Of a DNA stretch of 64,000 bases, positions 32,505 through 61,410 are shown piece by piece. Position numbers and translations under genes: made by a program. Numbering within the stretch: the first letter of the stretch is position 1; each line of letters begins with the position of its first letter. The stretch lies in the IMG/VR virus record IMGVR_UViG_3300024308_000302, positions 62,001 through 126,000 of that record; one strand, 5' to 3'. Under the pieces are notes generated by a model that saw only the letters and a program-made list of their open reading frames with translations, did not search any database and was not told the origin of the DNA.

Positions 32505-33023
32505 TTAAATTGAATGACTAGGAATATCTCTTGGACATAAATCTTCACCATTAAAATGCCCAGCTTGACCACAATAGGTTTTAAGGGCTTTTATATTATT
32601 ACTACACATAACTAAAGCATAGTTATCTATATATAAGGAAGGATCATAATCTGGAATATATCTATTTTGAAAAGTTCCTTTAGTCAAGTAGCCAGCGATA
32701 CCAGTAGTTGTTATAAAATTGTATTTAAAAGTTGTATTAATTTCTGGTGCATATCCAAGCGGAATTACATAATCATTCATGGCTAATTCAGAATCCTTTT
32801 CCTGATAAACCATCCAGTTAACAGTAGAATCATTATAATCAAACTCAATACAGCCAGCAGTATTTTCTGGTTCAATTGGAGTAGTTTGATCATTTATTTT
32901 AAACTGTATAGAACCATCAGGAAGTATGCCACCTTGTGGAACTTCTAACGGTGTATGAATAGAGTAATCAGCATAAGTGTTAAATATAAGAAGACTTAGA
33001 ATAGTTATAAGTGATTTGTTCAT
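32505..33023 (-). CDS. exported protein, PLE-motif family
   Basis: Signal peptide then DYSIHTPLEVPQGGILPDGSIQF. Confidence 0.8.
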   Translation of the reverse strand: MNKSLITILSLLIFNTYADYSIHTPLEVPQGGILPDGSIQFKINDQTTPIEPENTAGCIEFDYNDSTVNWMVYQEKDSELAMNDYVIPLGYAPEINTTFKYNFITTTGIAGYLTKGTFQNRYIPDYDPSLYIDNYALVMCSNNIKALKTYCGQAGHFNGEDLCPRDIPSHSI

Positions 33024-33132
33024 GAGAGTAATGAAATGTTAGTAATATTATAATAACATCGCATTATAAAAGATCAAGATTATGCTTGAAAAAAGGGAAA
33101 ATAATACAATGAGTGCTATTTTGTTAAAAATA

Positions 33133-33861
33133 TTAACAAATAAAAGAAGTGCTTTTAAAGAAAGATTCAGATTTAAAACCATCACTTCTGGCATCTTCAA
33201 GTAGTTGTAGAGTTTTAAACCGGAACAATTCACGCTTACTCCGAACATCAAAAACAACACGTTCAGTATAACCTTTAAGTTTAGGGTGTTTCTTTTGAAC
33301 TTCGCGGCTCTTTTCCTTATCAATGGCCATAGAGATAACAGCATCTTCAAGATCAATGCTCAAACCAATTTGATTTTGAACAAAATCATTAAAGGTGAGG
33401 AACTGAGTCAATTCAGGGTATTTCAAGTGTTCACGCAAGGCTTCAAGGGTCTTAAAGAAGCGGTCGTCAAAACCCACACCATGATGCACAATGAAAGAAG
33501 GCTCTTTCAGTGCTTGATAGGTCAAAATATTTTTATAGAGTTTTTCAATCATGGAACCTTTGCTTTCTTGATATTTGAACTCAAAGATAGAGCCAGTTTT
33601 CATATCAAAAAAGTCAGGGTCAATACGAATGTCTCCGATATGGATTTTACCTTGCACACCCCAACCACGAAGAAAACCTTCGGTTCCAAGGAAGCGAGTA
33701 AAATACAGATAATCATTATCAACCCAACGGGAAATGTCATCGTCACTTGTAGCGACATATCCGTTATTAACGAAATAGGGTTGACCAGCAGCGGCAATGA
33801 TCGCAAGACCAATCTGCTCAAAAACTGTACCGTTGCTTTTGCTGGAGTTTATCTTGCTCAT
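33133..33861 (-). CDS. PD-(D/E)XK nuclease-like protein
   Basis: IDPDF...IFEFKYQ.S.GS..EKL; start MSKINS. Confidence 0.65.
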   Translation of the reverse strand: MSKINSSKSNGTVFEQIGLAIIAAAGQPYFVNNGYVATSDDDISRWVDNDYLYFTRFLGTEGFLRGWGVQGKIHIGDIRIDPDFFDMKTGSIFEFKYQESKGSMIEKLYKNILTYQALKEPSFIVHHGVGFDDRFFKTLEALREHLKYPELTQFLTFNDFVQNQIGLSIDLEDAVISMAIDKEKSREVQKKHPKLKGYTERVVFDVRSKRELFRFKTLQLLEDARSDGFKSESFFKSTSFIC

Positions 33862-33996
33862 AATCAAAGACTTCAAATAACCTAATGAAGCCTGATTATA
33901 GCAAATTTGAGGTGTGCTGTAAAGGAAAAATGAAAGATTATATAGACAATAATCTATTATCACTCATAAAGAAAATAATTTTACAAAAAACATCAA

Positions 33997-34407
33997 TTAT
34001 GCAAAATCGTAAGCCTTCACATTACCTTTTTTGTCATAACCAACCTGCTGACAATCAATAAAGTCTGTCCAAGAAGGCAATTCTTTACGTTGTTCTTTTG
34101 TTGGCAACACCAACCGTTCTTGAATAACACAAAGGAAACCATCCAGAATAAAGCCACGGCTCTTTGCAGTAGTCTCATCAGAATAGCTGGACTCAACACA
34201 ATTATCATGAATTCCACTGTCAGAACGTGGGAATTTGATTACAAAATTTTTGCTGATAAATGTAGCCCGATTGCGACCACAAGATGGTTCGCCATATTTT
34301 GCAATCAATCGAGCCAGCACAAATTTAGCTCGGTCATTGATAGAAGCATCGTCCCAATCACAAAAATTAACTGATGGAATGCGTTGCTGAGTCATGTGAA
34401 GAGTCAT
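33997..34407 (-). CDS. hypothetical protein, possible minimal kinase-like fold
   Basis: R..F...FVIKFP...N..E and D...VGY..G.VKAYDF. Confidence 0.55.
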   Translation of the reverse strand: MTLHMTQQRIPSVNFCDWDDASINDRAKFVLARLIAKYGEPSCGRNRATFISKNFVIKFPRSDSGIHDNCVESSYSDETTAKSRGFILDGFLCVIQERLVLPTKEQRKELPSWTDFIDCQQVGYDKKGNVKAYDFA

Positions 34408-34452
34408 GTGAAAACTCCATTTTCGTTAGATGAAGCAATTATATCATACCTG

Positions 34453-35367
34453 TCATTTAAACAAAAGCATTTCTGCAAGATTAATTCTTTCCTCAAAAGA
34501 ATGAAGTGTATTGAATGGCCCAGTCATGAATATTTCTGGTAAAAGTTCTTTTATGTTATCGTCATTACACAACCTGAACTTTCTGAAAGTTACAAATTCA
34601 GATTCTGAAAAACCATCAGGATTACACTCAAATATACAATAAATGTCGTCAATAAATGCACGTTCAGAATATAATACTGAATTAAATGTCAATATCAACT
34701 TTTTATCGTAAAGTCCAAAAGAAGATGAAAAAGAAATATGTGTAAAATTCAAATTTAAGTCGAAATGAATTTGAATAGTAGGAAGCATGTCTTGAAAATA
34801 TTTCAGATTTTCTGGCAGTTTAACCCAATGGTTTTTAAAAGCAAAAGGTTTAACTTTAAAAGCAATGGAATTCGTAAGAATAACACCAACTCTTTCAATA
34901 TCCGTACCATATAAAAGAGAAAAGTCTCTATCAAATAAAGTATCAGTAATAAAGGGATCGAGTTCAAAATTTTCTTGAATTTTATCAAACTCAGAATAAA
35001 ATTTATTCAAAATAAATTCTAGAGAGTCATCTTTTCTAAAACTGTCGATCAAATAAGTTAACGAAGAATGAACTTTAATTGATTTGCGAGTTCCATTCAT
35101 GTTGTAATAAATACAGACACTATGTAAATCTTTATTTTCAAAAAAAATATCTAAATCAAGTGGTTCAATAGTATCATAGGGCAAATGTGAAACATATTGT
35201 TGAGAAAAATATTGTTGAATATCTATCTTATGAAATGGAATTTTGAACACAGTGCATTGGGCAACTTCTCTAATGTCATAAAACGAAGAAATAACAGATA
35301 TATCAGTCTCTGGAAAATTTAATTTCCGAAGAACTTCAATAACGTAAGGATAACGTGTTAAAGACAT
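34453..35367 (-). CDS. hypothetical protein, shares C-terminus with 37091..37687
   Basis: IKELLPEIF..GP...ERINLAEML. Confidence 0.85.
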   Translation of the reverse strand: MSLTRYPYVIEVLRKLNFPETDISVISSFYDIREVAQCTVFKIPFHKIDIQQYFSQQYVSHLPYDTIEPLDLDIFFENKDLHSVCIYYNMNGTRKSIKVHSSLTYLIDSFRKDDSLEFILNKFYSEFDKIQENFELDPFITDTLFDRDFSLLYGTDIERVGVILTNSIAFKVKPFAFKNHWVKLPENLKYFQDMLPTIQIHFDLNLNFTHISFSSSFGLYDKKLILTFNSVLYSERAFIDDIYCIFECNPDGFSESEFVTFRKFRLCNDDNIKELLPEIFMTGPFNTLHSFEERINLAEMLLFK

Positions 35368-35405
35368 TCTGCTAATTCCTTAAAATGGAAAAAGTCCCGA
35401 AGGAC

Positions 35406-35582
35406 TCATTCACCATCATCTGAATCAGATGGTTCATCTTCAATATCAAAGGAATAACTTCGACCATCACCTTTGTCAAAACCGGAAGTGAAACCAGATT
35501 CTACCTGTTCGCGGATTTTATCAAGGGCATCCAAAAGGTCTTCTGTAGTTTGACCAGTGCTTTCAAGTTTAAGAGTTAGCAT
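35406..35582 (-). CDS. 58 aa acidic protein (not in ORF track)
   Basis: MLTLKLESTGQTTEDLLDALDKIREQVESGF...; AAGGA RBS. Confidence 0.75.
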   Translation of the reverse strand: MLTLKLESTGQTTEDLLDALDKIREQVESGFTSGFDKGDGRSYSFDIEDEPSDSDDGE

Positions 35583-35596
35583 ATTTGTATTCCTTA

Positions 35597-36034
35597 TTAG
35601 TTGTGAGATTTATTAAGTTGAGTGTTGTTATAAACACTAGAAAAATGCATCTTTGCATCAATAAATACATTTTGATTTTCAAAAATCTTATTAACATCAT
35701 CATTGCCCAATGGTTTGTTGTGTTTAATACTTAGGGCAAAGTATTTTTGATAGCGTTTGATATAAACATTAACTTGATCTTCAATCAAAGAATGAATAAT
35801 AACATAATCATCAAACTTGATTTTGTCACAAAAACTTTTAGAAAGCTCACTGACTTTGAGGTCTTTTTCAAGTTCCGTAATAAAAAGATCCAACGCAGAC
35901 AAACTGGACTTGAAATCAAGCTCTTGAAGTTCACCAATAAGTTTTGAACCATAATCAGAAGATTCAACATGGTCCTCAATCAAGGTTTCCCGAGCTTTTT
36001 TTGCCATTTGATGCAGGGTAAGAACATGAGACAT
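35597..36034 (-). CDS. hypothetical protein
   Basis: 145 aa, GAGG RBS. Confidence 0.8.
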   Translation of the reverse strand: MSHVLTLHQMAKKARETLIEDHVESSDYGSKLIGELQELDFKSSLSALDLFITELEKDLKVSELSKSFCDKIKFDDYVIIHSLIEDQVNVYIKRYQKYFALSIKHNKPLGNDDVNKIFENQNVFIDAKMHFSSVYNNTQLNKSHN

Positions 36035-36086
36035 AAATGCACCTCTAATTTAAGATGACTAATTATACAATATCTAAACTATATAA

Positions 36087-36374
36087 TCAAGAAATGGTTA
36101 AAAAACTCTGAGTGTTAATGACTTTTATGTAAGCAAGTAGTAAATCCATGAATTTACGCTTTGTTTCTGGATTTTCTTGTTTTTGAACTAATTCGTAAAG
36201 GCGAAACATAGTATCACGATTTTCACAAGCTTTAATAAACCCAGATCGTGTATGTTGCAAATTGTAGTAACTAAGGAAAATATTCATTCCTTTTTGAATT
36301 TTTTTCATGATTTCTTCGTCAGAGTAAGGATAAAGACTAATCATTTTCATAAATTGAAGAATTGGATTATACAT
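36087..36374 (-). CDS. hypothetical protein
   Basis: 95 aa ORF. Confidence 0.7.
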   Translation of the reverse strand: MYNPILQFMKMISLYPYSDEEIMKKIQKGMNIFLSYYNLQHTRSGFIKACENRDTMFRLYELVQKQENPETKRKFMDLLLAYIKVINTQSFLTIS

Positions 36375-36465
36375 AAATTCACCTGTAATTTAAGCTACAA
36401 AGCATAAATATTAATGGAAAAATTATATCACAAACATAAAACTTTATCAAATAAAAAAGCCTGCA

Positions 36466-37029
36466 TCAGCAGGCTTCAGATTGTGGATTGAAGATATTTC
36501 TTGAAACTCCCAATAAGGCAATCACACCACAAACAACTTGCAATGTTGCAATAGGATAATTGCCCACATACATCAAGTGAACAAAAAATACAATATGAGT
36601 TAGCAAGTTGCTCATAAAGAACATCTTTTCACTGATTTTATGTTGTGTAAACAACATGAAAGTAAATGGTAAAGTAACAACTGGAATCCAACCAATACTT
36701 TGGAAGAACCAACCAGAAACATCATTCACAATATAGTTGGCTACAGCACCAATAAAAGTAAACAAAGAAATAATCATCATATTTTTAAAGGACACGAATT
36801 TAAAGTTCAACGTCACACCAAGAACAGCAAGAAGACTTGAAATGATAAACAATCCATTTGAAATAACAGACTGAATATTTTCAATCATTAAACTTGAAGC
36901 CATAAAAATAACAGAGGCCACTAACATGGCTGTTGAGAAAAACCAATGTTCTTTTTTAATTGTACCAAAGGAAATCAGGACAGATGCCAAAATGGCAATA
37001 AAGGAAGCAAACCAACTAATAACAATCAT
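36466..37029 (-). CDS. polytopic membrane protein (two 3-TM repeats, SWEET/PQ-loop-like topology)
   Basis: About 7 hydrophobic helices with internal W..ENIQ/GNYP-type repeat. Confidence 0.7.
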   Translation of the reverse strand: MIVISWFASFIAILASVLISFGTIKKEHWFFSTAMLVASVIFMASSLMIENIQSVISNGLFIISSLLAVLGVTLNFKFVSFKNMMIISLFTFIGAVANYIVNDVSGWFFQSIGWIPVVTLPFTFMLFTQHKISEKMFFMSNLLTHIVFFVHLMYVGNYPIATLQVVCGVIALLGVSRNIFNPQSEAC

Positions 37030-37090
37030 TGTTAACTCATTTTCTGAAATGGAACATTATTATAGCAAAAAATAGGTTTATTGGCAACTG

Positions 37091-37687
37091 TTAAATAATA
37101 AGCATTTTAGCTAAATCGATCCTATCTTTCAAATTAGGAATATTACTTGGACCTACAAGGAATAATTCAGGAAGAATCTCTATAATGGAATCTTTAATAT
37201 TTAAATGAATATGCAAAATATCTAAGACATCATCTTGAGGCAAACCAGTGAAATTTATATCAAGAATAGTAGTATATTTATCAGGAGCAGTATCATAAAG
37301 AATACCGTATGTTTTGATACAATGTAAAATATTACCACTTAAGTCAGTTGTAATCCTAGTTTCCATAACATGTTGTATATTATTACTTTTTTTCAAATAT
37401 TCTTTATATAAAAACATGACTGTGAAATTTGAATAATTATTAGAAGCCTTAAAAAGTATAATTCTTGGAAGCATATCTATAAGAGATGTCAAAAATTGTG
37501 GTATATAAGGAATATTAGGAGAAGAAATAATAACAGAACACTCAAGACGAATTTTATCATTATAAACAAGGTATTTATCAGAAACAGAATCTCTATTAAA
37601 GTCAAAATCAGTCAAATCTATATTAAAATTAGAAGACAATAAAGAAATAAAATGTTTGAGATTGTTCAAATAAGAGTTATTAGCCAT
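37091..37687 (-). CDS. hypothetical protein, shares C-terminus with 34453..35367
   Basis: IIEILPELF..GP...DRIDLAKML. Confidence 0.8.
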   Translation of the reverse strand: MANNSYLNNLKHFISLLSSNFNIDLTDFDFNRDSVSDKYLVYNDKIRLECSVIISSPNIPYIPQFLTSLIDMLPRIILFKASNNYSNFTVMFLYKEYLKKSNNIQHVMETRITTDLSGNILHCIKTYGILYDTAPDKYTTILDINFTGLPQDDVLDILHIHLNIKDSIIEILPELFLVGPSNIPNLKDRIDLAKMLII

Positions 37688-37753
37688 ATTTATTATTTCA
37701 CCTATATACAAAAACAAAAAAGCCCATACGGGCCTTTTTGTTTGAAGAAGGTT

Positions 37754-37888
37754 TTATTCATCAAAAACTTTTTTACTGTCTGCATCGATTTTATCCCAAT
37801 CGGCATCTTTCTCACGTTTTTGGGCTTGCTGATGTTGCTGGTAAGCCAGTTCAATTTCTTGTTCGCGGGTCAGTTTTTGTTGAGTCAT
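37754..37888 (-). CDS. 44 aa helical peptide, paralogue of 29420..29551 (not in ORF track)
   Basis: MTQQKLTREQEIELAYQQHQQAQKREKDADWDKIDADSKKVFDE; GGAG RBS. Confidence 0.8.
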   Translation of the reverse strand: MTQQKLTREQEIELAYQQHQQAQKREKDADWDKIDADSKKVFDE

Positions 37889-37956
37889 TTACATCTCCAA
37901 TTGCTTCGTTGTTTGTATGGGTTAATTATACTGATTTTTAGGCTTGCTGTAAAGCT

Positions 37957-38367
37957 TTATTTTGGTAAGTGATCCCAATATTGAGCGTCAACAGAATCAT
38001 AAATTTCTTCGTTTTCGCAAACGAGAACATACCAACCAGTTTCACGCTCACCAACAGGATGACCAAAGTACGCAATAATAGGTTTATCATAACCTTTGGC
38101 TTTAACCAGATATTCACCATAAGATTCTGGTTCTTTCCACACACGCTTCCAGTCAGCTTCTGTTGGAATCTCAGACCAAGACTCAATGTCAACAGCAACA
38201 TAGTCAGAATCGTTCTCAGAAACCAAAGAGTACCAACCAGTAGCTCGTTGACCAACAGGGTGATCGTAACGAGCGACAATTACTTTGTGATATCCTTTTA
38301 CTTTGACAAGATAGTCGCCATATTCTTCAGGCTCTTGATAAGGGCGTTTCCATTCTACAACTGCCAT
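37957..38367 (-). CDS. protein with two tandem DUF551-like repeats
   Basis: W(K)R..(Q/K)EPE.YG.YLVK.KGY...HPVG.R.TGWY.LV.EN repeated twice. Confidence 0.8.
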   Translation of the reverse strand: MAVVEWKRPYQEPEEYGDYLVKVKGYHKVIVARYDHPVGQRATGWYSLVSENDSDYVAVDIESWSEIPTEADWKRVWKEPESYGEYLVKAKGYDKPIIAYFGHPVGERETGWYVLVCENEEIYDSVDAQYWDHLPK

Positions 38368-38432
38368 TTTTGTTGCTCCAAGCTATCTGTTTAGGATTTA
38401 ATTATAGCAAAAAAGTTAGTAATGGTAAAGCT

Positions 38433-38678
38433 TTATTGTGCTGAGTCCATTACAGATTCAAGCCAACTTTGAGCTTCTTTAACATACTCTGCACCAGCTT
38501 CACTATTTTTAAGAATTCGACTCAAGATGCCCAAAACAGCATCTTTTTCAATCTTGTCAGATGCAATATCACGCATAAGATTGCTAATATCATTTTTGAT
38601 AGAAACATTGCCATGGTAACTATTGTCCATTGCATTTTTACTGGTTTGAAGTGCTTTTTTTACCAAAGGAGTCATCAT
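38433..38678 (-). CDS. hypothetical protein
   Basis: 81 aa ORF. Confidence 0.7.
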   Translation of the reverse strand: MMTPLVKKALQTSKNAMDNSYHGNVSIKNDISNLMRDIASDKIEKDAVLGILSRILKNSEAGAEYVKEAQSWLESVMDSAQ

Positions 38679-38679
38679 A

Positions 38680-38886
38680 TCATTCCTCTACGAGTTCAAT
38701 TTCAAGAGCCATCATGAAGCAACGACTTGAAACAGTATCATCATCCCAAAGAATTGAAATACTGGCTTCTCGGTCAGTTGGGTCAAATTCAATAACAGTA
38801 CCTTGCTGAGTTTTGGCGAAGTTCCATACACGTTTTCCAAAGATAGAATCATCTTCTGGATGTTGACATACTAACATGAAATTCAT
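38680..38886 (-). CDS. hypothetical protein
   Basis: 68 aa ORF, translationally coupled. Confidence 0.7.
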   Translation of the reverse strand: MNFMLVCQHPEDDSIFGKRVWNFAKTQQGTVIEFDPTDREASISILWDDDTVSSRCFMMALEIELVEE

Positions 38887-39095
38887 TCCTTGTCTTTATT
38901 TTTCGAGATTTTGTAATAAGCACTGGTCAGATACCAGCCAAGGGCACGAATTGCTCCGTCAGCACCCACATCAGGATGCTTTACGTCGAAAACGTCATCA
39001 ATAAGATAACCAACGTCATAGCGACCATCAGGGTACTTACGAACTTGAATAATTTTGTTTTGATCTTCGATTTCGGTAACGATTTCAAAAGACAT
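38883..39095 (-). CDS. hypothetical protein
   Basis: 70 aa, AGGT RBS. Confidence 0.75.
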   Translation of the reverse strand: MSFEIVTEIEDQNKIIQVRKYPDGRYDVGYLIDDVFDVKHPDVGADGAIRALGWYLTSAYYKISKNKDKE

Positions 39096-39158
39096 ATGGC
39101 ACCTATCACATCAAATTAATGATGCGATTATAGCATATGATAGGTGTACAAACAAGGA

Positions 39159-39572
39159 TTAGACTGTTGCTATTTCAGAAAAAATAGGGAAAAAGAATGC
39201 TATAACAAAAAGACCATCGAAAAGGCAAGCTGTGCCAGCTATTTGAAATAATTTTGATTTATAAGCATCTGTCATTTTAGTAGAGCAGTAGGTTAAATAA
39301 GAACCAACAATGAATAATAAAAATGAGACAAAAATTAATGCCGTAGACACTGGTATGTTTAAAACAGTAAGGCCAGCAAATGGTAATATATTTTGTAAAT
39401 AACAGCCTAGTGAAACTAATCCAGCAAAAAGAGACATAAACAATATAAAGCCTACAATACCACCAACCACTAATAAAATAAATGATCCTAAATGTGCAAA
39501 CATAAAAATCTCATAGTTCAATAATAAAAATATAACAGTTGTAAAATAGATTGCAATAAAAAAGGCCACCAA
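39159..39572 (-). CDS. membrane protein
   Basis: 3-4 hydrophobic segments; true start may be MFAHLG at 39503. Confidence 0.7.
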   Translation of the reverse strand: MVAFFIAIYFTTVIFLLLNYEIFMFAHLGSFILLVVGGIVGFILFMSLFAGLVSLGCYLQNILPFAGLTVLNIPVSTALIFVSFLLFIVGSYLTYCSTKMTDAYKSKLFQIAGTACLFDGLFVIAFFFPIFSEIATV

Positions 39573-39597
39573 AGTGACCTTAGTAATAACGGTTTAA

Positions 39598-39942
39598 TTA
39601 GAAATCAATATACTTCAAATTATAACCATGTTTGTTGGCAAAAAGATCAATATCATCTTTAGTCCAATCAGGATCAAACGATTTAACCAATGAGCCAGCA
39701 TCATCAAGCAAATCGTGAAAGAATGTCATGCCAGTCTCAACACGAACAACAACACCATCTTTGAGTGAACCTGAAAAATCAGGCAGACTAATCAATGTAG
39801 CCATCTGATAATTTTTACTTGCCGCTAATTTTTTCTTTTTAATCCGATTATAAATAATGAACGAAACATAAAGTGTCAAAGCAAAAGCTAGAAAAAGAAA
39901 TCCAAGAAAAATGTTAGAATACATAACAATATACCTCATCAA
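39598..39942 (-). CDS. membrane-anchored hypothetical protein
   Basis: N-terminal TM followed by RIKKKK. Confidence 0.7.
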   Translation of the reverse strand: MMRYIVMYSNIFLGFLFLAFALTLYVSFIIYNRIKKKKLAASKNYQMATLISLPDFSGSLKDGVVVRVETGMTFFHDLLDDAGSLVKSFDPDWTKDDIDLFANKHGYNLKYIDF

Positions 39943-39983
39943 TCAATGCTGTAATTATAACAAAAATCCGAATTAAATAAAAG

Positions 39984-40358
39984 CTATTTTACAACTCGTA
40001 ATGTTGGTTTGCCTTTAGGGCGTGGTGTATTATCTGGCTTGTCATCAATAGATTCTTTTTCAAAAATGTAACCTTTGCCATTTTCGTTTGCATAAATCGC
40101 TTGAATAGCACCAACCGGAACATAAATATCAAACAAAGAACCTTTAAAACGAGCAGAAAAAGATAAAGCGATATTATCAGACTGGAAAGATGTGATTGCA
40201 CCCATAGCAATATTCAGTACAATATACTCATCATTCTGATAAGCTGGTGGAACAATAACATCAGGATATTGAACAGAAACCTTAATATGTGGCGTCATAC
40301 CATTATCAACAATCCACTCATAGATTCCACGAATGATATAAGGTCGTCTTGAATTCAT
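39984..40358 (-). CDS. sspB: stringent starvation protein B (ClpXP adaptor)
   Basis: RPY..R..YEWIVDN..TPH, IVLNI, FSARF.G, AIYA.ENG.G and C-terminal ClpX-binding LRVVK. Confidence 0.95.
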   Translation of the reverse strand: MNSRRPYIIRGIYEWIVDNGMTPHIKVSVQYPDVIVPPAYQNDEYIVLNIAMGAITSFQSDNIALSFSARFKGSLFDIYVPVGAIQAIYANENGKGYIFEKESIDDKPDNTPRPKGKPTLRVVK

Positions 40359-40467
40359 AATCGTTCCTTTAAAATTTTGTCTATTATATTGTTTTTCAGG
40401 CTTTAGGTCAATTCAAATAGTTAAGTCAAAAAAACATAAATCTAAAGTGCTGTTTTATAGAAAAATA

Positions 40468-40695
40468 TTAATAATAAATAATTCGATTCTCATCTGTTTT
40501 TTTTGCTGTTTCAAAATTATCAACAGAATATGAGATACCAGTAAACATTAAAACCATAACTAAACTAAAAGCTCCAAATTCAAATAACAAAGAAAGTCTT
40601 GATTGTCGAAATGATATATTTTTTTTAACAAATTTAGTTTTAATCAGAGTTAATTCTTTTTCTTGAACAGTTTCAATAACCAAATCATCATTCAT
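40468..40695 (-). CDS. small membrane protein
   Basis: Single TM; start MNDDLV. Confidence 0.6.
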   Translation of the reverse strand: MNDDLVIETVQEKELTLIKTKFVKKNISFRQSRLSLLFEFGAFSLVMVLMFTGISYSVDNFETAKKTDENRIIYY

Positions 40696-40797
40696 ATAAA
40701 TCACCTTTAAGAATATCCTGCATAATAACAAAAAATACAAAAATGTCAATTTTTAGAACAAAAAAAAGCCTCCGAAGAGGCTCTTTTTGATTGTTAG

Positions 40798-40989
40798 TTA
40801 AAACAATTGCAAAAGATAGTTTTTCAATACTGGAAAGTAAACATCATATACCTTCATTTTCAAAATGGCAAAAATTGGCAACCCAAAAATTAGAGAGCAC
40901 AATACAGTTACCACAAGTTCTTCTGCTTTGTTCAGTTGTACATCATTATCAAAATTTTCGTTGTTCAAGTCCATAGCCCACCTCATCAT
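40798..40989 (-). CDS. small membrane protein
   Basis: Single TM; GAGG RBS. Confidence 0.6.
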   Translation of the reverse strand: MMRWAMDLNNENFDNDVQLNKAEELVVTVLCSLIFGLPIFAILKMKVYDVYFPVLKNYLLQLF

Positions 40990-41072
40990 TTACAATAGAG
41001 ATATTATACCACAAAGAGGTCGAGAGGGAAGAAAAAAGCCTCAATAAATGATACTTTTTTTAGAACTATTTG

Positions 41073-41762: not shown

Positions 41763-41806
41763 GGATAGCTCTCCTAAAGAATAGCCATATTATAGCAAAG
41801 AAAAGA

Positions 41807-42484: not shown

Positions 42485-43351
42485 ATGATTAAACTATTAC
42501 ATATTGCTATGATGGCAATAACTTTGACGCCAATTTCTTTTGCTGGATATACTATTAAAATACCTTTAGATAGTAGTCATATCAATATGGGAAATAATCA
42601 ACCAACTAACCCGACTAATCCAACTACACCATCAAAAAGTTATGATGACTTTTTAGAAGATCTATTTGCTAATAACACTGGATTCCAAGATAAATATAAT
42701 AACTTATGTAGTCAATATGAAGGCGGAGTAAGAACAGATTATGTGCCATCAGATGATGGAATAATTGATGTGAATGCTAACTGTGTTCAATTCCCCGGTT
42801 ATGATTTTTCTGGTAAAACATTCGCAGATGCAGCTATTGGTTGGGCCAGTTTCATTGGTGCAGATCTAAGTAATATACAGATGTCTGAGTTATATATGGA
42901 ATATACAGATTTTTCAGATGCTAACTTATCTAATGCTGTTGTAAATAATGGAGCCTTCAACTACGCAAGTTTTGATGGTACTAATATGTCATCAGCACAA
43001 TTTAATAATCCAAGTTTTATTGATTCATCTTTTGTTGATACCAATTTATCAAATGCTACTTTTGCAACAAACACAACTGTAAATTCATCTACTTTTGAAA
43101 ATGCAAATCTAAGTGGTGCAACATTTGAAGGTAACAACTCATTAAGAGGAACAACATTTACAAACTCTAATTTAAGTGGCGTAACATTTGGAGCAGGAAC
43201 AGGTTTTGATAACACTATTTTTGATGGAGTTGATTTAAGAGGTGCAGTATTCAGTGACTCACTTAATATCTATGGTGCTACATTTATAAATGTCATTTAT
43301 GATGAAACTACAGTTTGGCCAAGGTGGTATACACCACCAGCATCAATGTGA
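42485..43351 (+). CDS. exported pentapeptide-repeat protein (PL-motif family)
   Basis: Signal peptide, GYTIKIPLD, TNP linker, A(D/N)LS.A.F pentapeptide repeats. Confidence 0.88.
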   Translation: MIKLLHIAMMAITLTPISFAGYTIKIPLDSSHINMGNNQPTNPTNPTTPSKSYDDFLEDLFANNTGFQDKYNNLCSQYEGGVRTDYVPSDDGIIDVNANCVQFPGYDFSGKTFADAAIGWASFIGADLSNIQMSELYMEYTDFSDANLSNAVVNNGAFNYASFDGTNMSSAQFNNPSFIDSSFVDTNLSNATFATNTTVNSSTFENANLSGATFEGNNSLRGTTFTNSNLSGVTFGAGTGFDNTIFDGVDLRGAVFSDSLNIYGATFINVIYDETTVWPRWYTPPASM

Positions 43352-43360
43352 ACACAAAAA

Positions 43361-55524: not shown

Positions 55525-56478
55525 TCAAATGATTTTGAATTTTTTTACACCACCAAGAGAAAAATGAGCTATTTTGAAGTCCACCAACCTATACAGCAAG
55601 TCCAAAGTATAAGCAGAATCGTTGCCAGCATTATGAAGATAGCTTGAAAAATGGTTGACTTTAAGAGCTTTCAAAGCATCTTTAAGCGAAATATAATGAT
55701 TTTTGGCTGATTTTGCTGCAATGGATTCACATTCATTATAAATAACAGAAGATGTATCAATACATTTAATATGTTCAATTTGAGTCATATCAAAATTACA
55801 ATGACGCAAAATTTTGAATTCAATAGGTAATGCGTGACCAATAATAAAATCAACATCTTTTAGATGCTCAATGAGGATTGGGGCAAAATCATCATGAGTT
55901 ACGAGCACAGATGTGCCAAATTTGAAAGTGTCCATTCGTTTTTTAGTTGTTGTATAGTGAAAATGATTAACAACGCCATCAAAAGAAATAGTGACGCCCA
56001 TTTCAAAGATTTCTATTTTTTTTGATGAATCACGATATTCAAAATCAAGGGAAAGAATCTTTTTTCCTTCCAAGCTAATAGGAAGGGGAGATTCAAATTT
56101 TTCTGCAAATGCAGCTTTCTTTTCTTTGCGAACAGCAATACGTTTTTGTTCAATATCATTGAAAATAAGTTTGAATTCTTCATGGGAAGAAACATCAAAA
56201 AATTCAAGTTTTTCTTTTGAAAATTTTGCATACTTTTTGAATGCTGTAACTTTAAGTTCCAAAGAAAATAAACTATTTACATAATCAATAATTGGAATCA
56301 AAGAATTTTTTCCAATATGAATTTTATCTTCAAATATACAGAAAGAAGAAACAAGACCTTTATCAAAAAGATCTTGTTCATTGAAAACAGATTTAAATTG
56401 TGAAGCCAAATCACGATTTTCAATAAAAATAGATTGATTTAAAAAAGTAGATTTGAGAACTGCAAAGTTATAAATCAT
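55525..56478 (-). CDS. DEDDh 3'-5' exonuclease domain protein
   Basis: LDFEY, IIGH, IDTS, HNAGNDSAYT. Confidence 0.85.
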   Translation of the reverse strand: MIYNFAVLKSTFLNQSIFIENRDLASQFKSVFNEQDLFDKGLVSSFCIFEDKIHIGKNSLIPIIDYVNSLFSLELKVTAFKKYAKFSKEKLEFFDVSSHEEFKLIFNDIEQKRIAVRKEKKAAFAEKFESPLPISLEGKKILSLDFEYRDSSKKIEIFEMGVTISFDGVVNHFHYTTTKKRMDTFKFGTSVLVTHDDFAPILIEHLKDVDFIIGHALPIEFKILRHCNFDMTQIEHIKCIDTSSVIYNECESIAAKSAKNHYISLKDALKALKVNHFSSYLHNAGNDSAYTLDLLYRLVDFKIAHFSLGGVKKFKII

Positions 56479-56596
56479 GGTTAATCCTATTTTCATTAAT
56501 CAAAGGAATTTAAATAATTAATGCATTATAGCATAGGCTGGAGAAAAAGACCAACAAAAAAGGGCCGACTGGCCCTCTCTGAAACTTTTTTGATGT

Positions 56597-56993: not shown

Positions 56994-58061
56994 TCAGAAT
57001 GAATAAATATTCATTTTAGGAAGTTCCCAAAGATAAGGTGCAATTTTAATACGTTTCTTTTGAATATTATAAGGATGCTCAATAAATTCAACCATTTGAA
57101 GAACAGCCATCAAAGTATAAGCCGCATCATTACCAGCATTATGCAAAATCAAAGAGTTATGTTCAATTTTCAAAATATGAAGCATATTTGACAAAGAAAC
57201 AGATTTATTTTTCATGTTTTCAAAGTAAAAATTGAAACGAGATTTCATTAGACCTTGAGAATCAATTACTTTCAGGTTATCAATAGACAGAATATCAATA
57301 CCATGATGTTTGAGAACAATATGTTCACTTGAAACAGAATGGCCAATAAGGTAATCAACATTAAGCAAGCGATCTTTAACAATAATCAACAATTCTTGAA
57401 CTGTAACAAATTGACTGTTACCAAACAGAAACTTATTACTTACATCTTTAGGATAGTGGTTCTCACCAATAGTGTCATTAACAATATAATGCTCATAGCT
57501 AATGACACCATCCTTAAAAATAGCCATACCACATTCCAAAATCGTCCAGTCTTTATTGGAATCAAACTCAAAATCAATAGCCATGATACGATTTGACTTG
57601 AAATTGGCAGATAACTGACTATTGAGTTTTTCTGTAATTTGAATTTTTTCTATACTTTCGGCTTTCTTTTCTTCTTTAATAGCAGCCCGAACAGCATCTT
57701 TACTTTCTTTATGCTCACCATTCATATTGAAACGAATTTGCTCAACAGCATCTTCAAATGTCAAGTAATCAGAAACTGTAAATGCAATTTCAGCTTTAGT
57801 TGATTGCGGGTCTTGAATATCAAATCCAAATTGATTTTTAATAGCATTCATGATTTTTGCAAGTTGCATTTCATCAAAAAGAATTGTTGAGCTTTTAGAA
57901 ACATAAAGTTCATCAACAAAATCTTTTTTTGCAACTTTAGAAAGCTTATAATTTTCCATGAAATCTGCAAAGACAATTTTTCTTTCTTTTTTAGTCTTAA
58001 ATTGATCAATCAAGCTTTCTTTGAAAGCTACTTGAACAGAGTTCCAGAAATAAAGGTTCAT
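56994..58061 (-). CDS. DEDDh 3'-5' exonuclease domain protein (paralogue of 55525..56478)
   Basis: IDFEF, LIGH, IDSQ, HNAGNDAAYT. Confidence 0.85.
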   Translation of the reverse strand: MNLYFWNSVQVAFKESLIDQFKTKKERKIVFADFMENYKLSKVAKKDFVDELYVSKSSTILFDEMQLAKIMNAIKNQFGFDIQDPQSTKAEIAFTVSDYLTFEDAVEQIRFNMNGEHKESKDAVRAAIKEEKKAESIEKIQITEKLNSQLSANFKSNRIMAIDFEFDSNKDWTILECGMAIFKDGVISYEHYIVNDTIGENHYPKDVSNKFLFGNSQFVTVQELLIIVKDRLLNVDYLIGHSVSSEHIVLKHHGIDILSIDNLKVIDSQGLMKSRFNFYFENMKNKSVSLSNMLHILKIEHNSLILHNAGNDAAYTLMAVLQMVEFIEHPYNIQKKRIKIAPYLWELPKMNIYSF

Positions 58062-58835: not shown

Positions 58836-58867
58836 AAGCCACGTATATGGCTTTTAGTTTGCTGTTA

Positions 58868-60403
58868 TTATTTAATACAACCAACTTCACAACTGTATGA
58901 AGCACCTTGCGTCTCAGAAGATATATACCAGTGCCCATTTAAGTTTTTATAGACCTTACAACCAGTAGGACCAGCACCAGAACCAATATATAGACCAGTT
59001 AAAAAACAACCAGAATACTGTCCAAGAGATCGTATAACAGGAGCAGTTGTTCCAGAATCTGAGCCACCACCAGCATAAGTACCCATAGAAATTAAATTAG
59101 ATCCAGAATTATTACTCCATATACCACTTATACAAGATAAAACACCACCTGTTGAATTTCTCGCAAGAGAACCATTAGGTGAACATGAACGACCTTCAAC
59201 CTCAACTTTAGTAAGATTGATATTGTTATCAAATTGAGCAGTACCTCTTGTATGTAAAGTACCATCCATAGATGTATTACCATTAACAACTAAATCATTT
59301 TTAACTGTCAAATAATTAGTATTTACAGCATTTGAAAATATAGTATCAGTATAAAGTTTATTGATCAAACCTTTCTGAGCAGATATGTTGTCAACTACTT
59401 GGTAGGCTACAGTAGATCCATTGTCGTCCATAGAGAATATTCCACATGGAGCAGTCTGAGCAGAATCAACCAATCCATCATCAGTGTTCTTATAAATAGG
59501 GCATAATTTATCAAGCATTATTCTTGAACTGATAGAAGAGTTTGTAACAACATCAACAGCAACAGGTGCTCCTGTCGTATTTTGAATGCCAATACCACAG
59601 TCAACATTAGAAGAGTTCCAAGAACCTGTTACTGTATCTTGTATCCATTTTAAACAAAGAAGTTTATCATTATCTTTAGTTGATTTAAACGTAACTGATG
59701 AACCAATCATAGAATTTGTGCCATCAACTCTTAAATGTTCATTACCACCCTCTCTATCATAAGTAGCAACTAACACACAATTGTTTTTCAAAGCCAAACA
59801 TTCTTTATTAGTTATTTTAGAATTTGTATCGGATGTTGAGGCAAAATAGAATTGATGACCACCAGTAATATTAAGAGAGTCATTTGCTTTTGCTGTCATA
59901 ATTGCTTTGTTATAATATCTGAAATTTTGAGAAAATACTTGTTGATTCTTTGCTTGGAATGTAACTTTGAAGTTCTTTATAAAACCTTCTGCATCTGGTG
60001 TTATCTTTGCCTTAATGTCAAAATTATAAGGTGATTTTGACCAGAAGTTACAAGGAATTAATTGTGTTGATTTTTCTGAGTCCAAAACAGGAACCCAGTT
60101 TTTTGCTCCACCACATGAAGATTGTTGTGCGATAAACTCTGTGCTGAGCATAGAAAGAATAGCATTAGAGCCAACCCATTCAGTGCCATTTTTAAAGTTA
60201 TTGATATCTAATCCATCTACATGAATTCTTTTATCAAATGCCGTAACAATTGAAACAATGTCTTTACCAAATATTAGTGCTTGTTCTTCACGCTGTCTTT
60301 CTAAGTACCAATAAAGAATACCCACAACGATTATCATGATTATACTAAGTGAAATGAGAGTTTCCAGAAGTGTTAAACCATCAGTTTTTTTTATAGATTG
60401 CAT
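58868..60403 (-). CDS. type IV prepilin-like PilV-type tip adhesin
   Basis: Prepilin cleavage G|LTLLE plus TM helix; GRSCSPNGSLARNSTGGVLSCISGIW as in shufflon PilV constant region; Cys-rich C-terminal module. Confidence 0.8.
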   Translation of the reverse strand: MQSIKKTDGLTLLETLISLSIIMIIVVGILYWYLERQREEQALIFGKDIVSIVTAFDKRIHVDGLDINNFKNGTEWVGSNAILSMLSTEFIAQQSSCGGAKNWVPVLDSEKSTQLIPCNFWSKSPYNFDIKAKITPDAEGFIKNFKVTFQAKNQQVFSQNFRYYNKAIMTAKANDSLNITGGHQFYFASTSDTNSKITNKECLALKNNCVLVATYDREGGNEHLRVDGTNSMIGSSVTFKSTKDNDKLLCLKWIQDTVTGSWNSSNVDCGIGIQNTTGAPVAVDVVTNSSISSRIMLDKLCPIYKNTDDGLVDSAQTAPCGIFSMDDNGSTVAYQVVDNISAQKGLINKLYTDTIFSNAVNTNYLTVKNDLVVNGNTSMDGTLHTRGTAQFDNNINLTKVEVEGRSCSPNGSLARNSTGGVLSCISGIWSNNSGSNLISMGTYAGGGSDSGTTAPVIRSLGQYSGCFLTGLYIGSGAGPTGCKVYKNLNGHWYISSETQGASYSCEVGCIK

Positions 60404-60645
60404 ATAGGAAGTGTTGTGACTTTATAATAAAATAACATAGAGTCCAATAATAAAGTATTACAATATGGTTAATATTTGATGAAATTTTTATTAAATTGTT
60501 ATTTATAAAGGATTTTTTGATAATTAATATTATATTTAAATAAATAGTGAATAAAAAATAAATGTTAAAATATATCAAATTATTAGATTAATTAAGAGTG
60601 TTGAATAATATTAAAAAAGCACTTATTTCTAAGTGCTTTATTTAA

Positions 60646-61410
60646 TTATAACAATATTTTTCTAACTCTACAAATTTCTGTATATTCGTAATTTGGATTA
60701 GGGCCAGAAACTGATGGTATGCGATTAGCATTGTGTAGATAAACATAAGAACCTTCTCTATCTGGATCATAATCTGATGGCACATGATACCATGTGTTGG
60801 ATATAACAGATATACCAAAAGTAGATGATTGCATAACATACTTACCGTTTACAGTATCATATGCTGAATAATCAGAATTTATATTAAAAATACATTCTGG
60901 AGTCCAATCAGGGCCTGATTGATCTTCTTGTTCTGGTGGATTATATGGTGGTTCTTCCTCATCATCTTCATATCCACCACCTGATGGCATTGGTACTGTA
61001 GGATAAATTTTACTGTCATCAACACAAATTTCATAGTTATCCATTTGTGGATTAGATTCTTTTAAAGCTCCTTCAGTAACCCCACTTGGCGGGCCACTAT
61101 GACCATTAGATGGACTATAAAACCCTATTATTCTTCCTTGATATACATAACCTTTATCTCCAGCTTTCAAAGCACCCATAGGTTGCTTAAAATAAGTAAC
61201 CATGTAGCCTGTTTCACCATTGTACTGACAATTACCACTCTGGTTGTCATTTGATTCAGAACCACTACCAGAGCCAATAACAATACTACCAGTTGGCAAA
61301 CTGCCACCATTGGTAAGTTCTAATGGAATCAAGACTGAAAACTCTGCAAATGAAGGTGAAACACTTGCAATTGCTACTAACAAGGCAGTTAATTTTATTC
61401 TTTTTTTCAT
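60646..61410 (-). CDS. exported protein, PLE-motif family, two Cys-bounded repeats
   Basis: Signal peptide then EFSVLIPLELTNGGSLPTGSI; C...YEIC and C...TEIC modules. Confidence 0.85.
   Translation of the reverse strand: MKKRIKLTALLVAIASVSPSFAEFSVLIPLELTNGGSLPTGSIVIGSGSGSESNDNQSGNCQYNGETGYMVTYFKQPMGALKAGDKGYVYQGRIIGFYSPSNGHSGPPSGVTEGALKESNPQMDNYEICVDDSKIYPTVPMPSGGGYEDDEEEPPYNPPEQEDQSGPDWTPECIFNINSDYSAYDTVNGKYVMQSSTFGISVISNTWYHVPSDYDPDREGSYVYLHNANRIPSVSGPNPNYEYTEICRVRKILL

What the first reader, a model, noticed from the sequence alone, without database searches (positions are those of the whole stretch)
32505..61410. Family of exported proteins with a shared N-terminal docking-like motif and swappable C-terminal modules
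Three dispersed genes have a Sec signal followed immediately by the same motif: A|DYSIHTPLEVPQGGILPDGSIQF (32505), A|EFSVLIPLELTNGGSLPTGSIVI (60646) and a shorter A|GYTIKIPLD (42485). Each continues with a flexible linker and a different payload: a Cys-bounded domain, two C...EIC repeats, or pentapeptide repeats. A conserved mature N-terminal strand with variable heads looks like a donor-strand/assembly tag for a surface structure. One member is adjacent to and co-oriented with the PilV-like gene. I know no described system with this architecture.
Basis: partly seen in the sequence, partly recalled or inferred. Interest (0 to 1): 0.75.

Follow-up and report, generated by a model that had tools for sequence, protein, structure and literature searches.

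The report
Exported proteins sharing an N-terminal docking tag
The three genes belong to a large, unannotated family of secreted, disulfide-bonded proteins that carry the same 24-residue tag right after the signal peptide and then unrelated binding domains; the tag most likely docks them onto a type IV pilus tip protein, though that link is not proven.

Summary
The 290-kb record holding the window has 13 genes of this kind, not 3. A profile of signal peptide plus tag finds 326 protein clusters among 1.84 billion representatives.

- **Tag.** Signal peptidase site AxA, then [E/D]-Y-x-[IV]-K-[IV]-P-L-E-x-x-x-G-G-x-L-P-N-G-S-I-x-[IF]. A Pro/Thr/Glu-rich linker and a payload follow.
- **Payloads.** 140 payloads fall into 55 unrelated groups, including leucine-rich repeats (LRR), Cys-bounded beta domains and pentapeptide repeats. 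137 of 140 have an even number of cysteines.
- **Annotation.** No Pfam, NCBIfam or PDB entry covers the tag. Named members are all "hypothetical protein" of Pseudomonas species, on low-GC mobile islands.
- **Neighbouring gene.** The 511-aa PilV-like gene is a type IVb minor pilin. Its only significant structural matches are TcpB and CofB, the two proteins known to bind N-terminal export signals of secreted cargo.
- **Linkage.** A tag gene lies next to a PilV-like gene in five contexts, on three different element backbones.
- **Against strict dependence.** Four of six tag-bearing Pseudomonas genomes have no PilV-type gene. The complex prediction gave no answer.
- **Verdict.** A pilus-tip docking or export signal is my best reading (about 0.4). 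Donor-strand assembly is not supported.

The parts
60646..61410 (-). Gene B, 254 aa: signal peptide, tag, Gly/Ser linker, then two Cys-bounded beta domains (residues 60-130 and 172-249).
   Evidence: ORF. The tag profile scores E 2e-21. The AF2 model has both domains at pLDDT about 80-88 and the tag region below 50. 16 orthologs at 37-80% identity keep the tag.
61345..61410 (-). Sec signal peptide of B (residues 1-22, ending SFA).
   Evidence: The sequence shows a basic n-region, a hydrophobic core and an AxA site. Across the family, position -1 is Ala in 96% and position -3 is A/T/S/V in 92%.
61273..61344 (-). Tag of B (mature residues 1-24, EFSVLIPLELTNGGSLPTGSIVIG).
   Evidence: Family consensus. 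Predicted disordered in the monomer.
61444..61471 (-). Sigma-70-like promoter of B (TTGACT, 16 nt spacer, TAAACT).
   Evidence: RNA-library contigs start just downstream of it.
60616..60639 (-). Intrinsic terminator of B (10-bp stem followed by a T run).
   Evidence: RNA-library coverage of B ends before it, and the spacer to the PilV-like gene has zero depth.
58868..60403 (-). PilV-like type IVb minor pilin, 511 aa. It has a class III signal (G|LTLLE), a pilin domain (residues 12-216), a conserved middle region up to about residue 430, and a variable H-type-lectin-like head (434-511).
   Evidence: Pfam Shufflon_N 30 bits against a cut-off of 27.5; N_methyl E 0.0014. Foldseek to TcpB/CofB E 3e-5, probability 0.97-0.99. 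VIA-align Z 8.1-8.4 to TcpB/CofB, 7.2-7.6 to T4b major pilins, 5.0-5.2 to snail H-type lectins. Constant and variable parts.
32505..33023 (-). Gene A, 172 aa: signal peptide (32970-33023), tag (32898-32969, DYSIHTPLEVPQGGILPDGSIQFK), then a 130-aa payload with 4 Cys.
   Evidence: (E 3.6e-19). It has its own hairpin-plus-T terminator just downstream.
42485..43351 (+). Gene C, 288 aa: signal peptide (42485-42544), short tag without the GG-LP loop (42545-42592, GYTIKIPLDSSHINMG), Pro/Thr/Asn linker, then pentapeptide repeats with 2 Cys.
   Evidence: (E 2.7e-17). The same short tag form occurs in two more paralogs of the record and in L015:8986-9822.

Best explanation
**What it is.** The genes encode Sec-exported, disulfide-stabilised modular proteins. 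After cleavage at AxA, the new N-terminus is a 24-residue tag ([E/D]YxxK[IV]PLExxxGGxLPNGSIx[IF]). The tag is disordered on its own and joined by a Pro/Thr/Glu-rich linker to an interchangeable binding domain (LRR, Cys-bounded beta domains, Ig/PKD-like domains, pentapeptide repeats).

**Proposed mechanism.** I propose the tag is a docking and export signal for a type IV pilus. In the periplasm it binds the conserved part of the tip minor pilin: the PilV-like protein encoded beside gene B, or a host or helper equivalent. The cargo is then carried through the secretin on the growing pilus. It ends up displayed at the tip as an exchangeable adhesin head, or is released.

**Known parallel.** This is how TcpF-TcpB and CofJ-CofB work. 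The difference here is that one tag serves a library of cargoes (13 in this 290-kb record).

**Carriers.** The module travels on mobile elements of Pseudomonas-like hosts. Each gene is its own promoter-to-terminator unit.

**Shown:** the family, the tag, the export signal, payload diversity, the fold of the pilin, recurrent adjacency, and transcription of B.

**Inferred:** binding of the tag to the pilin, passage through a pilus machine, and a role as adhesin or colonisation factor.
For: 1. **Cargo architecture matches known type IVb pilus (T4bP) export-signal cargo.** There is a Sec signal peptide, then a conserved mature N-terminus with a near-invariant aromatic residue at position 2 (Y 92%, F 6%). 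AF2 gives this segment pLDDT below 50. A linker and unrelated payloads follow. [quoted passage not shown]
2. **The adjacent 511-aa protein resembles TcpB and CofB.** Its only significant PDB matches are these two proteins, including their complexes with cargo N-terminal peptides (7w64, 5ypz). Foldseek gives E 3e-5 to 1e-4 and probability 0.90-0.99; VIA-align gives Z 7.7-8.4 over the full length. It has a T4b pilin domain and an H-type-lectin-like C-terminal domain.
3. **Adjacency recurs on different backbones.** It is seen in the window, in a P. aeruginosa island (L015, tag genes on both sides), in P. entomophila 6C6 (L023, 59 bp apart), in L037 (60 bp apart) and in a 25-30% GC element (L019). 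The 1.9-Mb contig holding PilV-like P0181 also holds tag protein P0218.
4. **Payloads suit an oxidising extracytoplasmic location and binding roles.** 137 of 140 have an even Cys count, and LRR is the largest group.
5. **Gene B is transcribed.** In two wastewater RNA libraries it is covered as its own unit at word depth 37-75. The PilV-like gene is at 5-7.6 and the spacers at 0, while DNA runs are flat at about 5-6.
Against: 1. **Co-occurrence is weak.** Of six tag-bearing genomes among 401 Pseudomonas species genomes, five lack this PilV-like type and four lack any Shufflon_N gene. Genome-level association gives P=0.052.
2. **Neither gene needs the other on the islands.** Island L031 has the same backbone as L015, L018 and L023 and keeps two tag genes without the pilin. 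L018 keeps the pilin without a tag gene.
3. **The equivalent binding domain is not conserved here.** TcpB and CofB bind cargo in their C-terminal lectin-like domain. Here that head is wholly variable between homologs while the tag is nearly invariant. Any docking site would have to lie in the conserved part (residues 30-430).
4. **No predicted complex.** A prediction with three copies of residues 217-511 plus one tag gave ipSAE 0.00. The tool's verdict was "no answer", which is neither support nor refutation.
5. **No pilus machinery in the record.** The 290-kb record has no pilus ATPase, secretin or prepilin peptidase.
6. **No sequence likeness to known signals.** The tag does not resemble FxxxYxSxS, SxGGAFT or YGF.
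7. **Cargo number differs.** Known systems export a single cargo each.
Confidence: 0.4

Rival explanations
1. The tag docks onto a different, universally conserved envelope component, such as peptidoglycan, an abundant outer-membrane protein, LPS, or a T2SS or other outer-membrane translocon. The proteins would be periplasmic or surface-tethered binding modules that mobile elements use for receptor masking, superinfection exclusion or entry exclusion. The PilV-like gene would be just another envelope-directed cargo that often shares the same cargo slot.
For: - Tag genes occur without any PilV-type gene in four of six Pseudomonas genomes. Most copies in the large elements are dispersed, far from the pilin.
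- The tag is extremely conserved across elements of 25-45% GC. That fits a target that is invariant in the host rather than one carried on the element.
- The carriers are small mobilisable or integrative islands with restriction-modification systems, where defence and exclusion cargo is typical.
Against: - It does not explain why the tag gene sits within about 60 bp of the PilV-like gene on three different backbones.
- No candidate receptor was identified.
- Payloads such as LRR are more typical of adhesins or effectors that face outward.
Confidence: 0.3
2. One reading: the tag is a donor strand or self-assembly element. Tags of different family members would pair by beta-hairpin or beta-augmentation to build a homo- or hetero-oligomeric surface structure that displays mixed heads.
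For: - The tag has the alternating hydrophobic pattern of a beta strand (Y-x-V-x-I-x-L-x) and a second strand (S-I-x-I). Short-tag forms look like a minimal hairpin.
- Many paralogs are co-resident in one genome.
Against: - The record has no chaperone or usher.
- The payloads are unrelated complete folds with no shared acceptor groove.
- Some genomes carry a single member, so hetero-assembly is not required.
- AF2 gives no ordered structure for the tag.
Confidence: 0.1
3. The tag is a processing or quality-control element, such as a pro-peptide, a protease or sortase-like recognition site, or a folding or Dsb-targeting leader. It would be removed or used transiently after export, with no docking role.
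For: - The tag lies at the extreme mature N-terminus and is separated from the payload by a flexible linker.
- The TcpF export signal is itself cleaved off on secretion (PMC10120004), so cleavage is plausible.
Against: - No protease or sorting enzyme co-occurs with it in the small islands.
- Conservation over 24 residues is more than most cleavage sites need.
- This reading can coexist with docking rather than replace it.
Confidence: 0.1

Closest known systems
Type IVb pilus export signal (T4bP-SS / ES): TcpF-TcpB of the Vibrio cholerae TCP and CofJ-CofB of ETEC CFA/III
   Same: - The cargo is Sec-exported.
- The disordered N-terminus of the mature protein carries the signal, with a critical aromatic residue.
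- The globular parts of the cargoes are unrelated.
- The cargo gene lies beside a roughly 400-520-aa tip minor pilin. The window's PilV-like protein matches TcpB and CofB structurally.
- The signal can be transferred to foreign proteins (PMC10120004).
   Different: - The tag has no sequence likeness to the known motifs.
- The tag is 24 residues long, against about 11.
- There are many cargoes per genome (13) instead of one.
- There is no pilus operon around the genes.
- The minor pilin's C-terminal head varies while the tag does not.
- Tag genes also occur without the pilin.
- Binding is untested.
R64/IncI1 thin-pilus PilV shufflon adhesin
   Same: - The 511-aa protein passes the Pfam Shufflon_N cut-off.
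- It has a constant N-terminal part and an exchangeable C-terminal head.
- Homologs are named PilV tip adhesin in Pseudomonas records.
   Different: - It has no tblastn match to any record in the plasmid collection.
- It is a lone gene on phage-like or integrative elements.
- Head variation is between homologs, not by local DNA inversion. No shufflon segments or Rci recombinase were looked for or seen nearby.
- If the main hypothesis holds, variety comes from non-covalently docked tagged proteins.
Curli CsgA N22 targeting segment
   Same: It is a Sec-exported protein whose first roughly 22 mature residues target it to an outer-membrane export machine (recalled from my own knowledge, not tested here).
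   Different: There is no sequence likeness, no CsgG/E/F genes were examined, and the payloads are not amyloid repeats.
Chaperone-usher pilins (N-terminal extension donor strand)
   Same: An N-terminal beta-strand-like segment with alternating hydrophobic residues follows a Sec signal.
   Different: There is no chaperone or usher, and the payloads are not strand-deficient Ig folds.

Membership tests
T4bP export-signal cargo (TcpF/CofJ class) | Sec signal peptide followed by a disordered N-terminal segment of the mature protein | tested here: met
   AxA site: position -1 is Ala in 96%. The tag region has pLDDT below 50 in the AF2 model of B.
T4bP export-signal cargo (TcpF/CofJ class) | Conserved aromatic residue near the mature N-terminus that is critical for binding | tested here: inconclusive
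   Y 92% and F 6% at mature position 2. Whether it is critical was not testable.
T4bP export-signal cargo (TcpF/CofJ class) | Sequence match to a known T4bP-SS motif (FxxxYxSxS, SxGGAFT, YGF) | tested here: not met
   The consensus [E/D]YxxK[IV]PLE...GGxLPNGSI differs from the motifs listed in PMC9565799.
T4bP export-signal cargo (TcpF/CofJ class) | Encoded with its cognate tip minor pilin inside a type IVb pilus operon | tested here: inconclusive
   It lies next to a TcpB/CofB-like minor pilin in five contexts. The record has no ATPase, secretin or peptidase. Four of six tag-bearing Pseudomonas genomes lack a PilV-type gene.
T4bP export-signal cargo (TcpF/CofJ class) | N-terminal segment binds the minor-pilin trimer | tested here: inconclusive
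   Complex prediction with three copies of residues 217-511 plus the tag gave ipSAE 0.00, verdict "no answer".
T4bP export-signal cargo (TcpF/CofJ class) | Pilus-dependent export to the medium or cell surface | not testable with these tools
   This needs fractionation in pilus mutants.
Type IVb minor pilin (TcpB/CofB/PilV class), for the 511-aa gene | Class III (prepilin) signal with Gly at -1 and Glu at +5 | tested here: met
   The sequence reads KKTDG|LTLLE. Pfam N_methyl scores E 0.0014, below its cut-off.
Type IVb minor pilin (TcpB/CofB/PilV class), for the 511-aa gene | T4b pilin fold followed by beta-rich domains, with overall likeness to TcpB/CofB | tested here: met
   Foldseek E 3e-5, probability 0.99. 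VIA-align Z 8.1-8.4 to TcpB/CofB and 7.2-7.6 to CofA, TcpA and PilS. The middle region (219-382) is modelled poorly.
Type IVb minor pilin (TcpB/CofB/PilV class), for the 511-aa gene | C-terminal H-type-lectin-like domain | tested here: met
   Residues 434-511 match Helix agglutinins 4q56 and 2ce6 at Z 5.0-5.2, with 72-74 aligned residues. This is a modest score.
Type IVb minor pilin (TcpB/CofB/PilV class), for the 511-aa gene | Located in a pilus biogenesis cluster | tested here: not met
   The 290-kb record has no T2SSE, Secretin or Peptidase_A24. A 53%-identical homolog (L036) does lie beside a secretin cluster and a pilin-like gene in a low-GC contig carrying MutS, RNase R and SppA genes, which looks chromosomal.
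Chaperone-usher pilus subunits (donor-strand exchange) | PapD-like chaperone and usher encoded with the subunits | tested here: not met
   PF00345 and PF00577 are absent from the record.
Chaperone-usher pilus subunits (donor-strand exchange) | Subunit body is an incomplete Ig-like fold shared by all subunits | tested here: not met
   There are 55 unrelated payload groups, including LRR and pentapeptide repeats.
Pentapeptide repeat proteins (payload of gene C) | Tandem A(D/N)LXX repeats matching the Pfam models | tested here: met
   PF13576 E 1.7e-29, PF13599 E 2e-21, PF00805 E 1.6e-17, all above their cut-offs.

The most novel reading that the evidence does not exclude
The module is a non-covalent counterpart of the shufflon. 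One conserved tip minor pilin serves as a universal socket. A library of tag-bearing proteins (13 in this 290-kb stretch, more than 300 clusters in nature) plugs exchangeable adhesin or effector heads onto a type IV pilus, or is exported by it. Mobile elements, from about 10-kb Pseudomonas islands to megabase-size low-GC elements, would use it to re-target their host's pili. The 24-residue tag would be the first general, multi-cargo, linear secretion signal for a type IV pilus-class machine.
Probability: 0.3. Interest if true: 0.85.

Novelty: new variant of a known kind. Interest (0 to 1): 0.7.

Why it matters
How type IV pili and type II secretion systems recognise their substrates is poorly understood. 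Only two single-cargo N-terminal signals are known, those of TcpF and CofJ.

A 24-residue tag shared by hundreds of otherwise unrelated exported proteins, and repeatedly encoded beside a TcpB/CofB-like tip pilin, would give three things:
- a directly testable, portable signal;
- a natural library of cargoes;
- a view of how mobile elements reprogram the surface of Pseudomonas.

Even if the pilus link fails, the family is large (326 clusters), has no family annotation in Pfam or NCBIfam, and occurs in clinical and environmental Pseudomonas species. It therefore deserves a family definition.

Tried and rejected
- **Megablast of window 30000-50000** against the phage and plasmid collections: no match.
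- **tblastn of the PilV-like protein and of a neighbouring 389-aa protein** against the phage collection, and of the PilV-like protein against the plasmid collection: no match.
- **Pfam, PHROGs and NCBIfam** on genes A and B: nothing significant.
- **Foldseek of the gene B model** against PDB and AFDB clusters: nothing significant. Weak SH3-like leads from the ESM Atlas were not confirmed.
- **The search for related loci with gene B orthologs** found nothing in IMG/VR or in the GTDB genomes.
- **The genome search on the metagenome records behind L005 and L007** was not possible because the records are not held.
- **Tag profile against PDB sequences:** chance-level hits only.
- **Complex prediction:** no answer.
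- **Covariation between tag and pilin:** none seen on inspection, and no formal analysis was run. The tag has the same consensus beside pilins with different heads. The divergent pilin on the 1.9-Mb contig (P0181) has a degenerate tag gene next to it, but that contig also carries a canonical tag protein, P0218.
- **Paper search for the sample identifiers:** nothing found.
- **Rejected: virion protein.** A Sec signal and paired cysteines argue for export, not cytoplasmic assembly.
- **Rejected: lipoprotein.** There is no Cys at position +1.
- **Rejected: N-glycosylation sequon.** N-G-S is only 67-68% conserved at N and G and lacks the acidic residue at -2.

Full report
**1. The observation**

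- Gene A: 32505-33023 (-), 172 aa.
- Gene C: 42485-43351 (+), 288 aa.
- Gene B: 60646-61410 (-), 254 aa.

Each starts with a typical Sec signal peptide ending in AxA. Each continues with x-[Y/F]-x-x-x-[I/T]-P-L-[E/D]. In A and B this is followed by x-x-x-G-G-x-L-P-x-G-S-I-x-[IF].

Gene C carries Pfam pentapeptide repeats (PF13576, E 1.7e-29). Genes A and B have no Pfam, PHROG or NCBIfam match. The 511-aa gene at 58868-60403 (-) lies 242 bp downstream of B on the same strand.

**2. The family is much larger than reported**

The window is positions 62001-126000 of a 290,157-bp record with 32% GC. A 23-residue HMM built from the three motifs finds ten genes at E 4.6e-13 to 2e-4 in the six-frame translation, seven of them new. 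Two weaker candidates (E 0.02 and 0.04) were confirmed by reading their sequences.

A profile of signal peptide plus tag (alignment A2) gives 13 matches, the last one degenerate. Four members are in tandem at record positions 186009-188678.

Every member has its own sigma-70-like promoter (TTGAC[T/A], 16-17 nt spacer, TAxxAT) and its own hairpin-plus-T terminator.

Three paralogs, gene C among them, have a short tag that lacks the GG-x-LP-x-x-S loop. A fourth, the degenerate thirteenth member, has only a decayed form of that loop. The core is therefore two short beta-strand-like pieces, Y-x-V-K-I-P-L-E and I-x-I, with an optional loop between them.

Nine long-tag paralogs average 54% identity over the tag. 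Only five of the 13 payloads are detectably related to each other.

**3. Spread in nature**

Against 1.84e9 representative proteins, profile A2 finds 326 clusters at E<=1e-3 and 66 at E<=1e-10. Of the best 148 hits, 145 are true matches at the very N-terminus. Three are long repeat proteins.

Residue frequencies over 133 members:

| Position | Residue (frequency) |
|---|---|
| -1 of the cleavage site | Ala 96% |
| mature 1 | E 48%, D 23% |
| mature 2 | Y 92%, F 6% |
| mature 5 | K 71% |
| mature 7-9 | P 100%, L 98%, E 98% |
| mature 13-14 | G 98%, G 98% |
| mature 16-17 | L 98%, P 92% |
| mature 18-21 | N 68%, G 67%, S 92%, I 97% |

A Pro/Thr/Glu-rich stretch follows. Payloads are 1-488 residues long, with a median of 131.

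The 140 payloads fall into 55 BLAST-unrelated groups. The largest group (46) is leucine-rich repeats, confirmed by Pfam LRR families in part of them. The second group (17) is the Cys-bounded domain of gene B.

137 of 140 payloads have 2, 4, 6 or 8 cysteines. That fits disulfide bonding outside the cytoplasm.

The tag profile matches no PDB sequence above chance.

**4. Who carries it**

The record is an IMG/VR "provirus". The identical gene B protein lies on a 1,539,155-bp metagenome contig. Orthologs lie on contigs of 773 kb, 520 kb, 177 kb and 108 kb, whose genes almost all lack Pfam hits.

Near-identical DNA occurs in subsurface, soil, freshwater, wastewater, food and silage metagenomes.

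Named members come from Pseudomonas:
- The gene next to the PilV-like homolog in P. entomophila has 94 relatives. 89 of them carry the tag.
- These include proteins of P. aeruginosa, P. monteilii, P. juntendi, P. guariconensis and P. helleri.
- All are annotated "hypothetical protein".

Among 401 Pseudomonas species genomes, six have tag genes. In every case the gene is on a low-GC (32-45%) island. The islands carry replicase, relaxase-like, serine-recombinase or ParA-like genes; those labels are partly my own reading of the N-terminal sequences.

**5. The PilV-like gene**

It has a prepilin signal (G|LTLLE) and passes the Pfam Shufflon_N cut-off at 30 bits against 27.5.

The AF2 model (30-sequence alignment) gives a confident pilin domain (residues 12-216, pLDDT about 88). 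The middle region is poorly modelled (219-382). The C-terminal domain is moderately confident.

Structural matches:
- **Foldseek.** The only significant PDB matches are TcpB (7w63, 7w64) and CofB (4qs4, 5ypz, 5ax6), at E 3e-5 to 1e-4. The type IVb major pilins follow.
- **VIA-align.** Z is 7.7-8.4 to TcpB and CofB over the whole length, and 7.2-7.6 to CofA, TcpA and PilS. Residues 434-511 score 5.0-5.2 to snail H-type lectins. That is the fold of the cargo-binding domain 3 of TcpB and CofB.

Homologs are 57-67% identical up to about residue 430. They then carry completely different heads.

A 53%-identical homolog sits beside a secretin cluster, a pilin-like gene and dsbB. Its low-GC contig also carries MutS, RNase R and SppA genes, so I read it as bacterial chromosome. 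The family therefore includes true pilus-locus members.

The 290-kb record itself has no pilus ATPase, secretin or prepilin peptidase.

**6. Is the tag family linked to the pilin?**

For:
- Tag genes lie directly beside PilV-like homologs in the window and in four other contexts.
- In P. aeruginosa GCA_040628195.1 (L015) a short-tag gene lies upstream and a full-tag LRR gene 62 bp downstream.
- In P. entomophila 6C6 (L023) the gap is 59 bp.
- In L037 the gap is 60 bp. Its pilin is labelled P. aeruginosa in NCBI.
- In L019, a 25-30% GC element with integrases and a FokI-type system, the tag gene is the second gene downstream of the pilin.
- These contexts represent three different backbones.
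- A 1.9-Mb contig carries two PilV-like genes and a tag protein.

Against:
- Five of the six tag-bearing Pseudomonas genomes lack this pilin type.
- Four of the six lack any Shufflon_N gene, compared with 26 of 401 genomes overall. The one-sided Fisher test gives P=0.052.
- Island L031 keeps its tag genes but not the pilin. Island L018 keeps the pilin but no tag gene.
- The complex prediction gave no answer.

**7. Mechanism**

The closest described logic is the type IVb pilus export signal. TcpF and CofJ are Sec-exported. Their disordered mature N-terminus, with a key aromatic residue, binds the trimeric tip minor pilin. The pilus then carries them through the secretin.

That signal is necessary, sufficient and transferable to a foreign protein. 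Each known system exports one cargo (PMC9565799, PMC10120004).

The present family has the same cargo anatomy and the same kind of neighbour. It differs in three ways:
- The tag sequence is different.
- There are many cargoes per genome.
- There is no local pilus operon.

Because the pilin head varies while the tag does not, any docking site should lie in the conserved part of the pilin.

I put this reading at about 0.4. The rivals are:
- a different conserved envelope receptor, about 0.3;
- self-assembly or donor-strand pairing, about 0.1 (no chaperone or usher);
- a processing or folding leader, about 0.1.

**8. Expression**

In two wastewater RNA libraries, contigs cover 60717-61413 and 60741-61324, which is essentially gene B, at word depth 37-75. 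The PilV-like gene is partly covered at 5-7.6, and both flanking spacers are at 0. Two DNA runs are flat at about 5-6.

This fits B being transcribed as the monocistronic unit predicted from its promoter and terminator. Contig word depths are a rough measure. DNA carry-over cannot be fully excluded.

**9. Verdict**

The finding is real, extends well beyond the window, and has no family annotation in Pfam or NCBIfam. The modular tag-plus-payload reading is right, and the donor-strand reading is not supported.

A known analogue exists, so this is best filed as a new variant of a known kind. The pilus-docking mechanism is still to be tested.

Noticed in passing
whole record (window = record positions 62001-126000); L005, L007, L016: The 290-kb "provirus" (CheckV 96%) appears to be a cut from a 1.54-Mb metagenome contig. 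Related contigs of 1.9 Mb, 1.04 Mb and 773 kb have the same style: small ORFan genes, mostly on one strand, almost no Pfam hits. The 290 kb has no terminase, T4-type capsid or PolB match, and its largest ORF is 633 aa. It looks like an accessory arm of a megabase-size element rather than a complete phage.
   Followed up: partly
record-wide; in the window: 43393-43466, 52792-52869, and 63975 onward: 35 tRNA genes are scattered through the 290 kb with heavy redundancy: 11 Leu(UAA), 6 Met, 5 Arg(UCU) and two CUA (amber suppressor) tRNAs. Supplying tRNAs for AT-rich codons would suit a 32% GC element living in a GC-rich host such as Pseudomonas.
   Followed up: no
window 50190-51260 (-); record 264692-266449 (-): There are two TnpB/IS605 OrfB-type genes (PHROG transposase E 2.6e-68; Pfam Cas12f1-like_TNB).
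   Followed up: no
window 4183-5316 (-): A T4 RnlA-like RNA ligase (PHROG 562, E 1.2e-66). The related 1.9-Mb contig carries Tpt1 (RNA 2'-phosphotransferase) and thymidine kinase. Another relative carries a class II aminoacyl-tRNA synthetase.
   Followed up: no
window 55525-56496 (-) and 56994-58061 (-): Two paralogous DEDDh-type exonuclease genes (Pfam DEDDh_C in the precomputed annotation) lie just downstream of the PilV-like gene.
   Followed up: no
L015:10001-11650; P0172; alignment A7 columns from about 560: The PilV-like homologs swap their C-terminal heads. The heads of P0182 and P0172 show a motif that I recognise, from memory, as a phage tail-collar domain (not tested against Pfam). 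The window's head is H-type-lectin-like. The P. entomophila head is Cys-rich.
   Followed up: partly
L018:7064-7444, L023:827-1234, L031:7604-7987, L037:855-1232: A conserved protein of about 127 aa lies just upstream of the PilV-like/tag slot in the Pseudomonas islands. The motif GKIGGMVGGFKRRERQ was read in L018, L023 and L031. L037 has a 125-aa gene in the same position that was not translated. Three of the islands sit next to purC-bamC.
   Followed up: no
L015:8986-9822, L019:9743-11021, L023:3265-3885: Many Pseudomonas members share a repeated payload motif, roughly W-x-P-x-E-P-x-Y-x-E-W-x-N-x-G-x-x-Y-G-C-S-N-W-x-P, with no Pfam match.
   Followed up: partly
L036:7140-7634: A dsbB gene lies between a secretin cluster and the PilV-like homolog in a low-GC contig. 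This fits a need for disulfide formation in these Cys-rich exported proteins.
   Followed up: no
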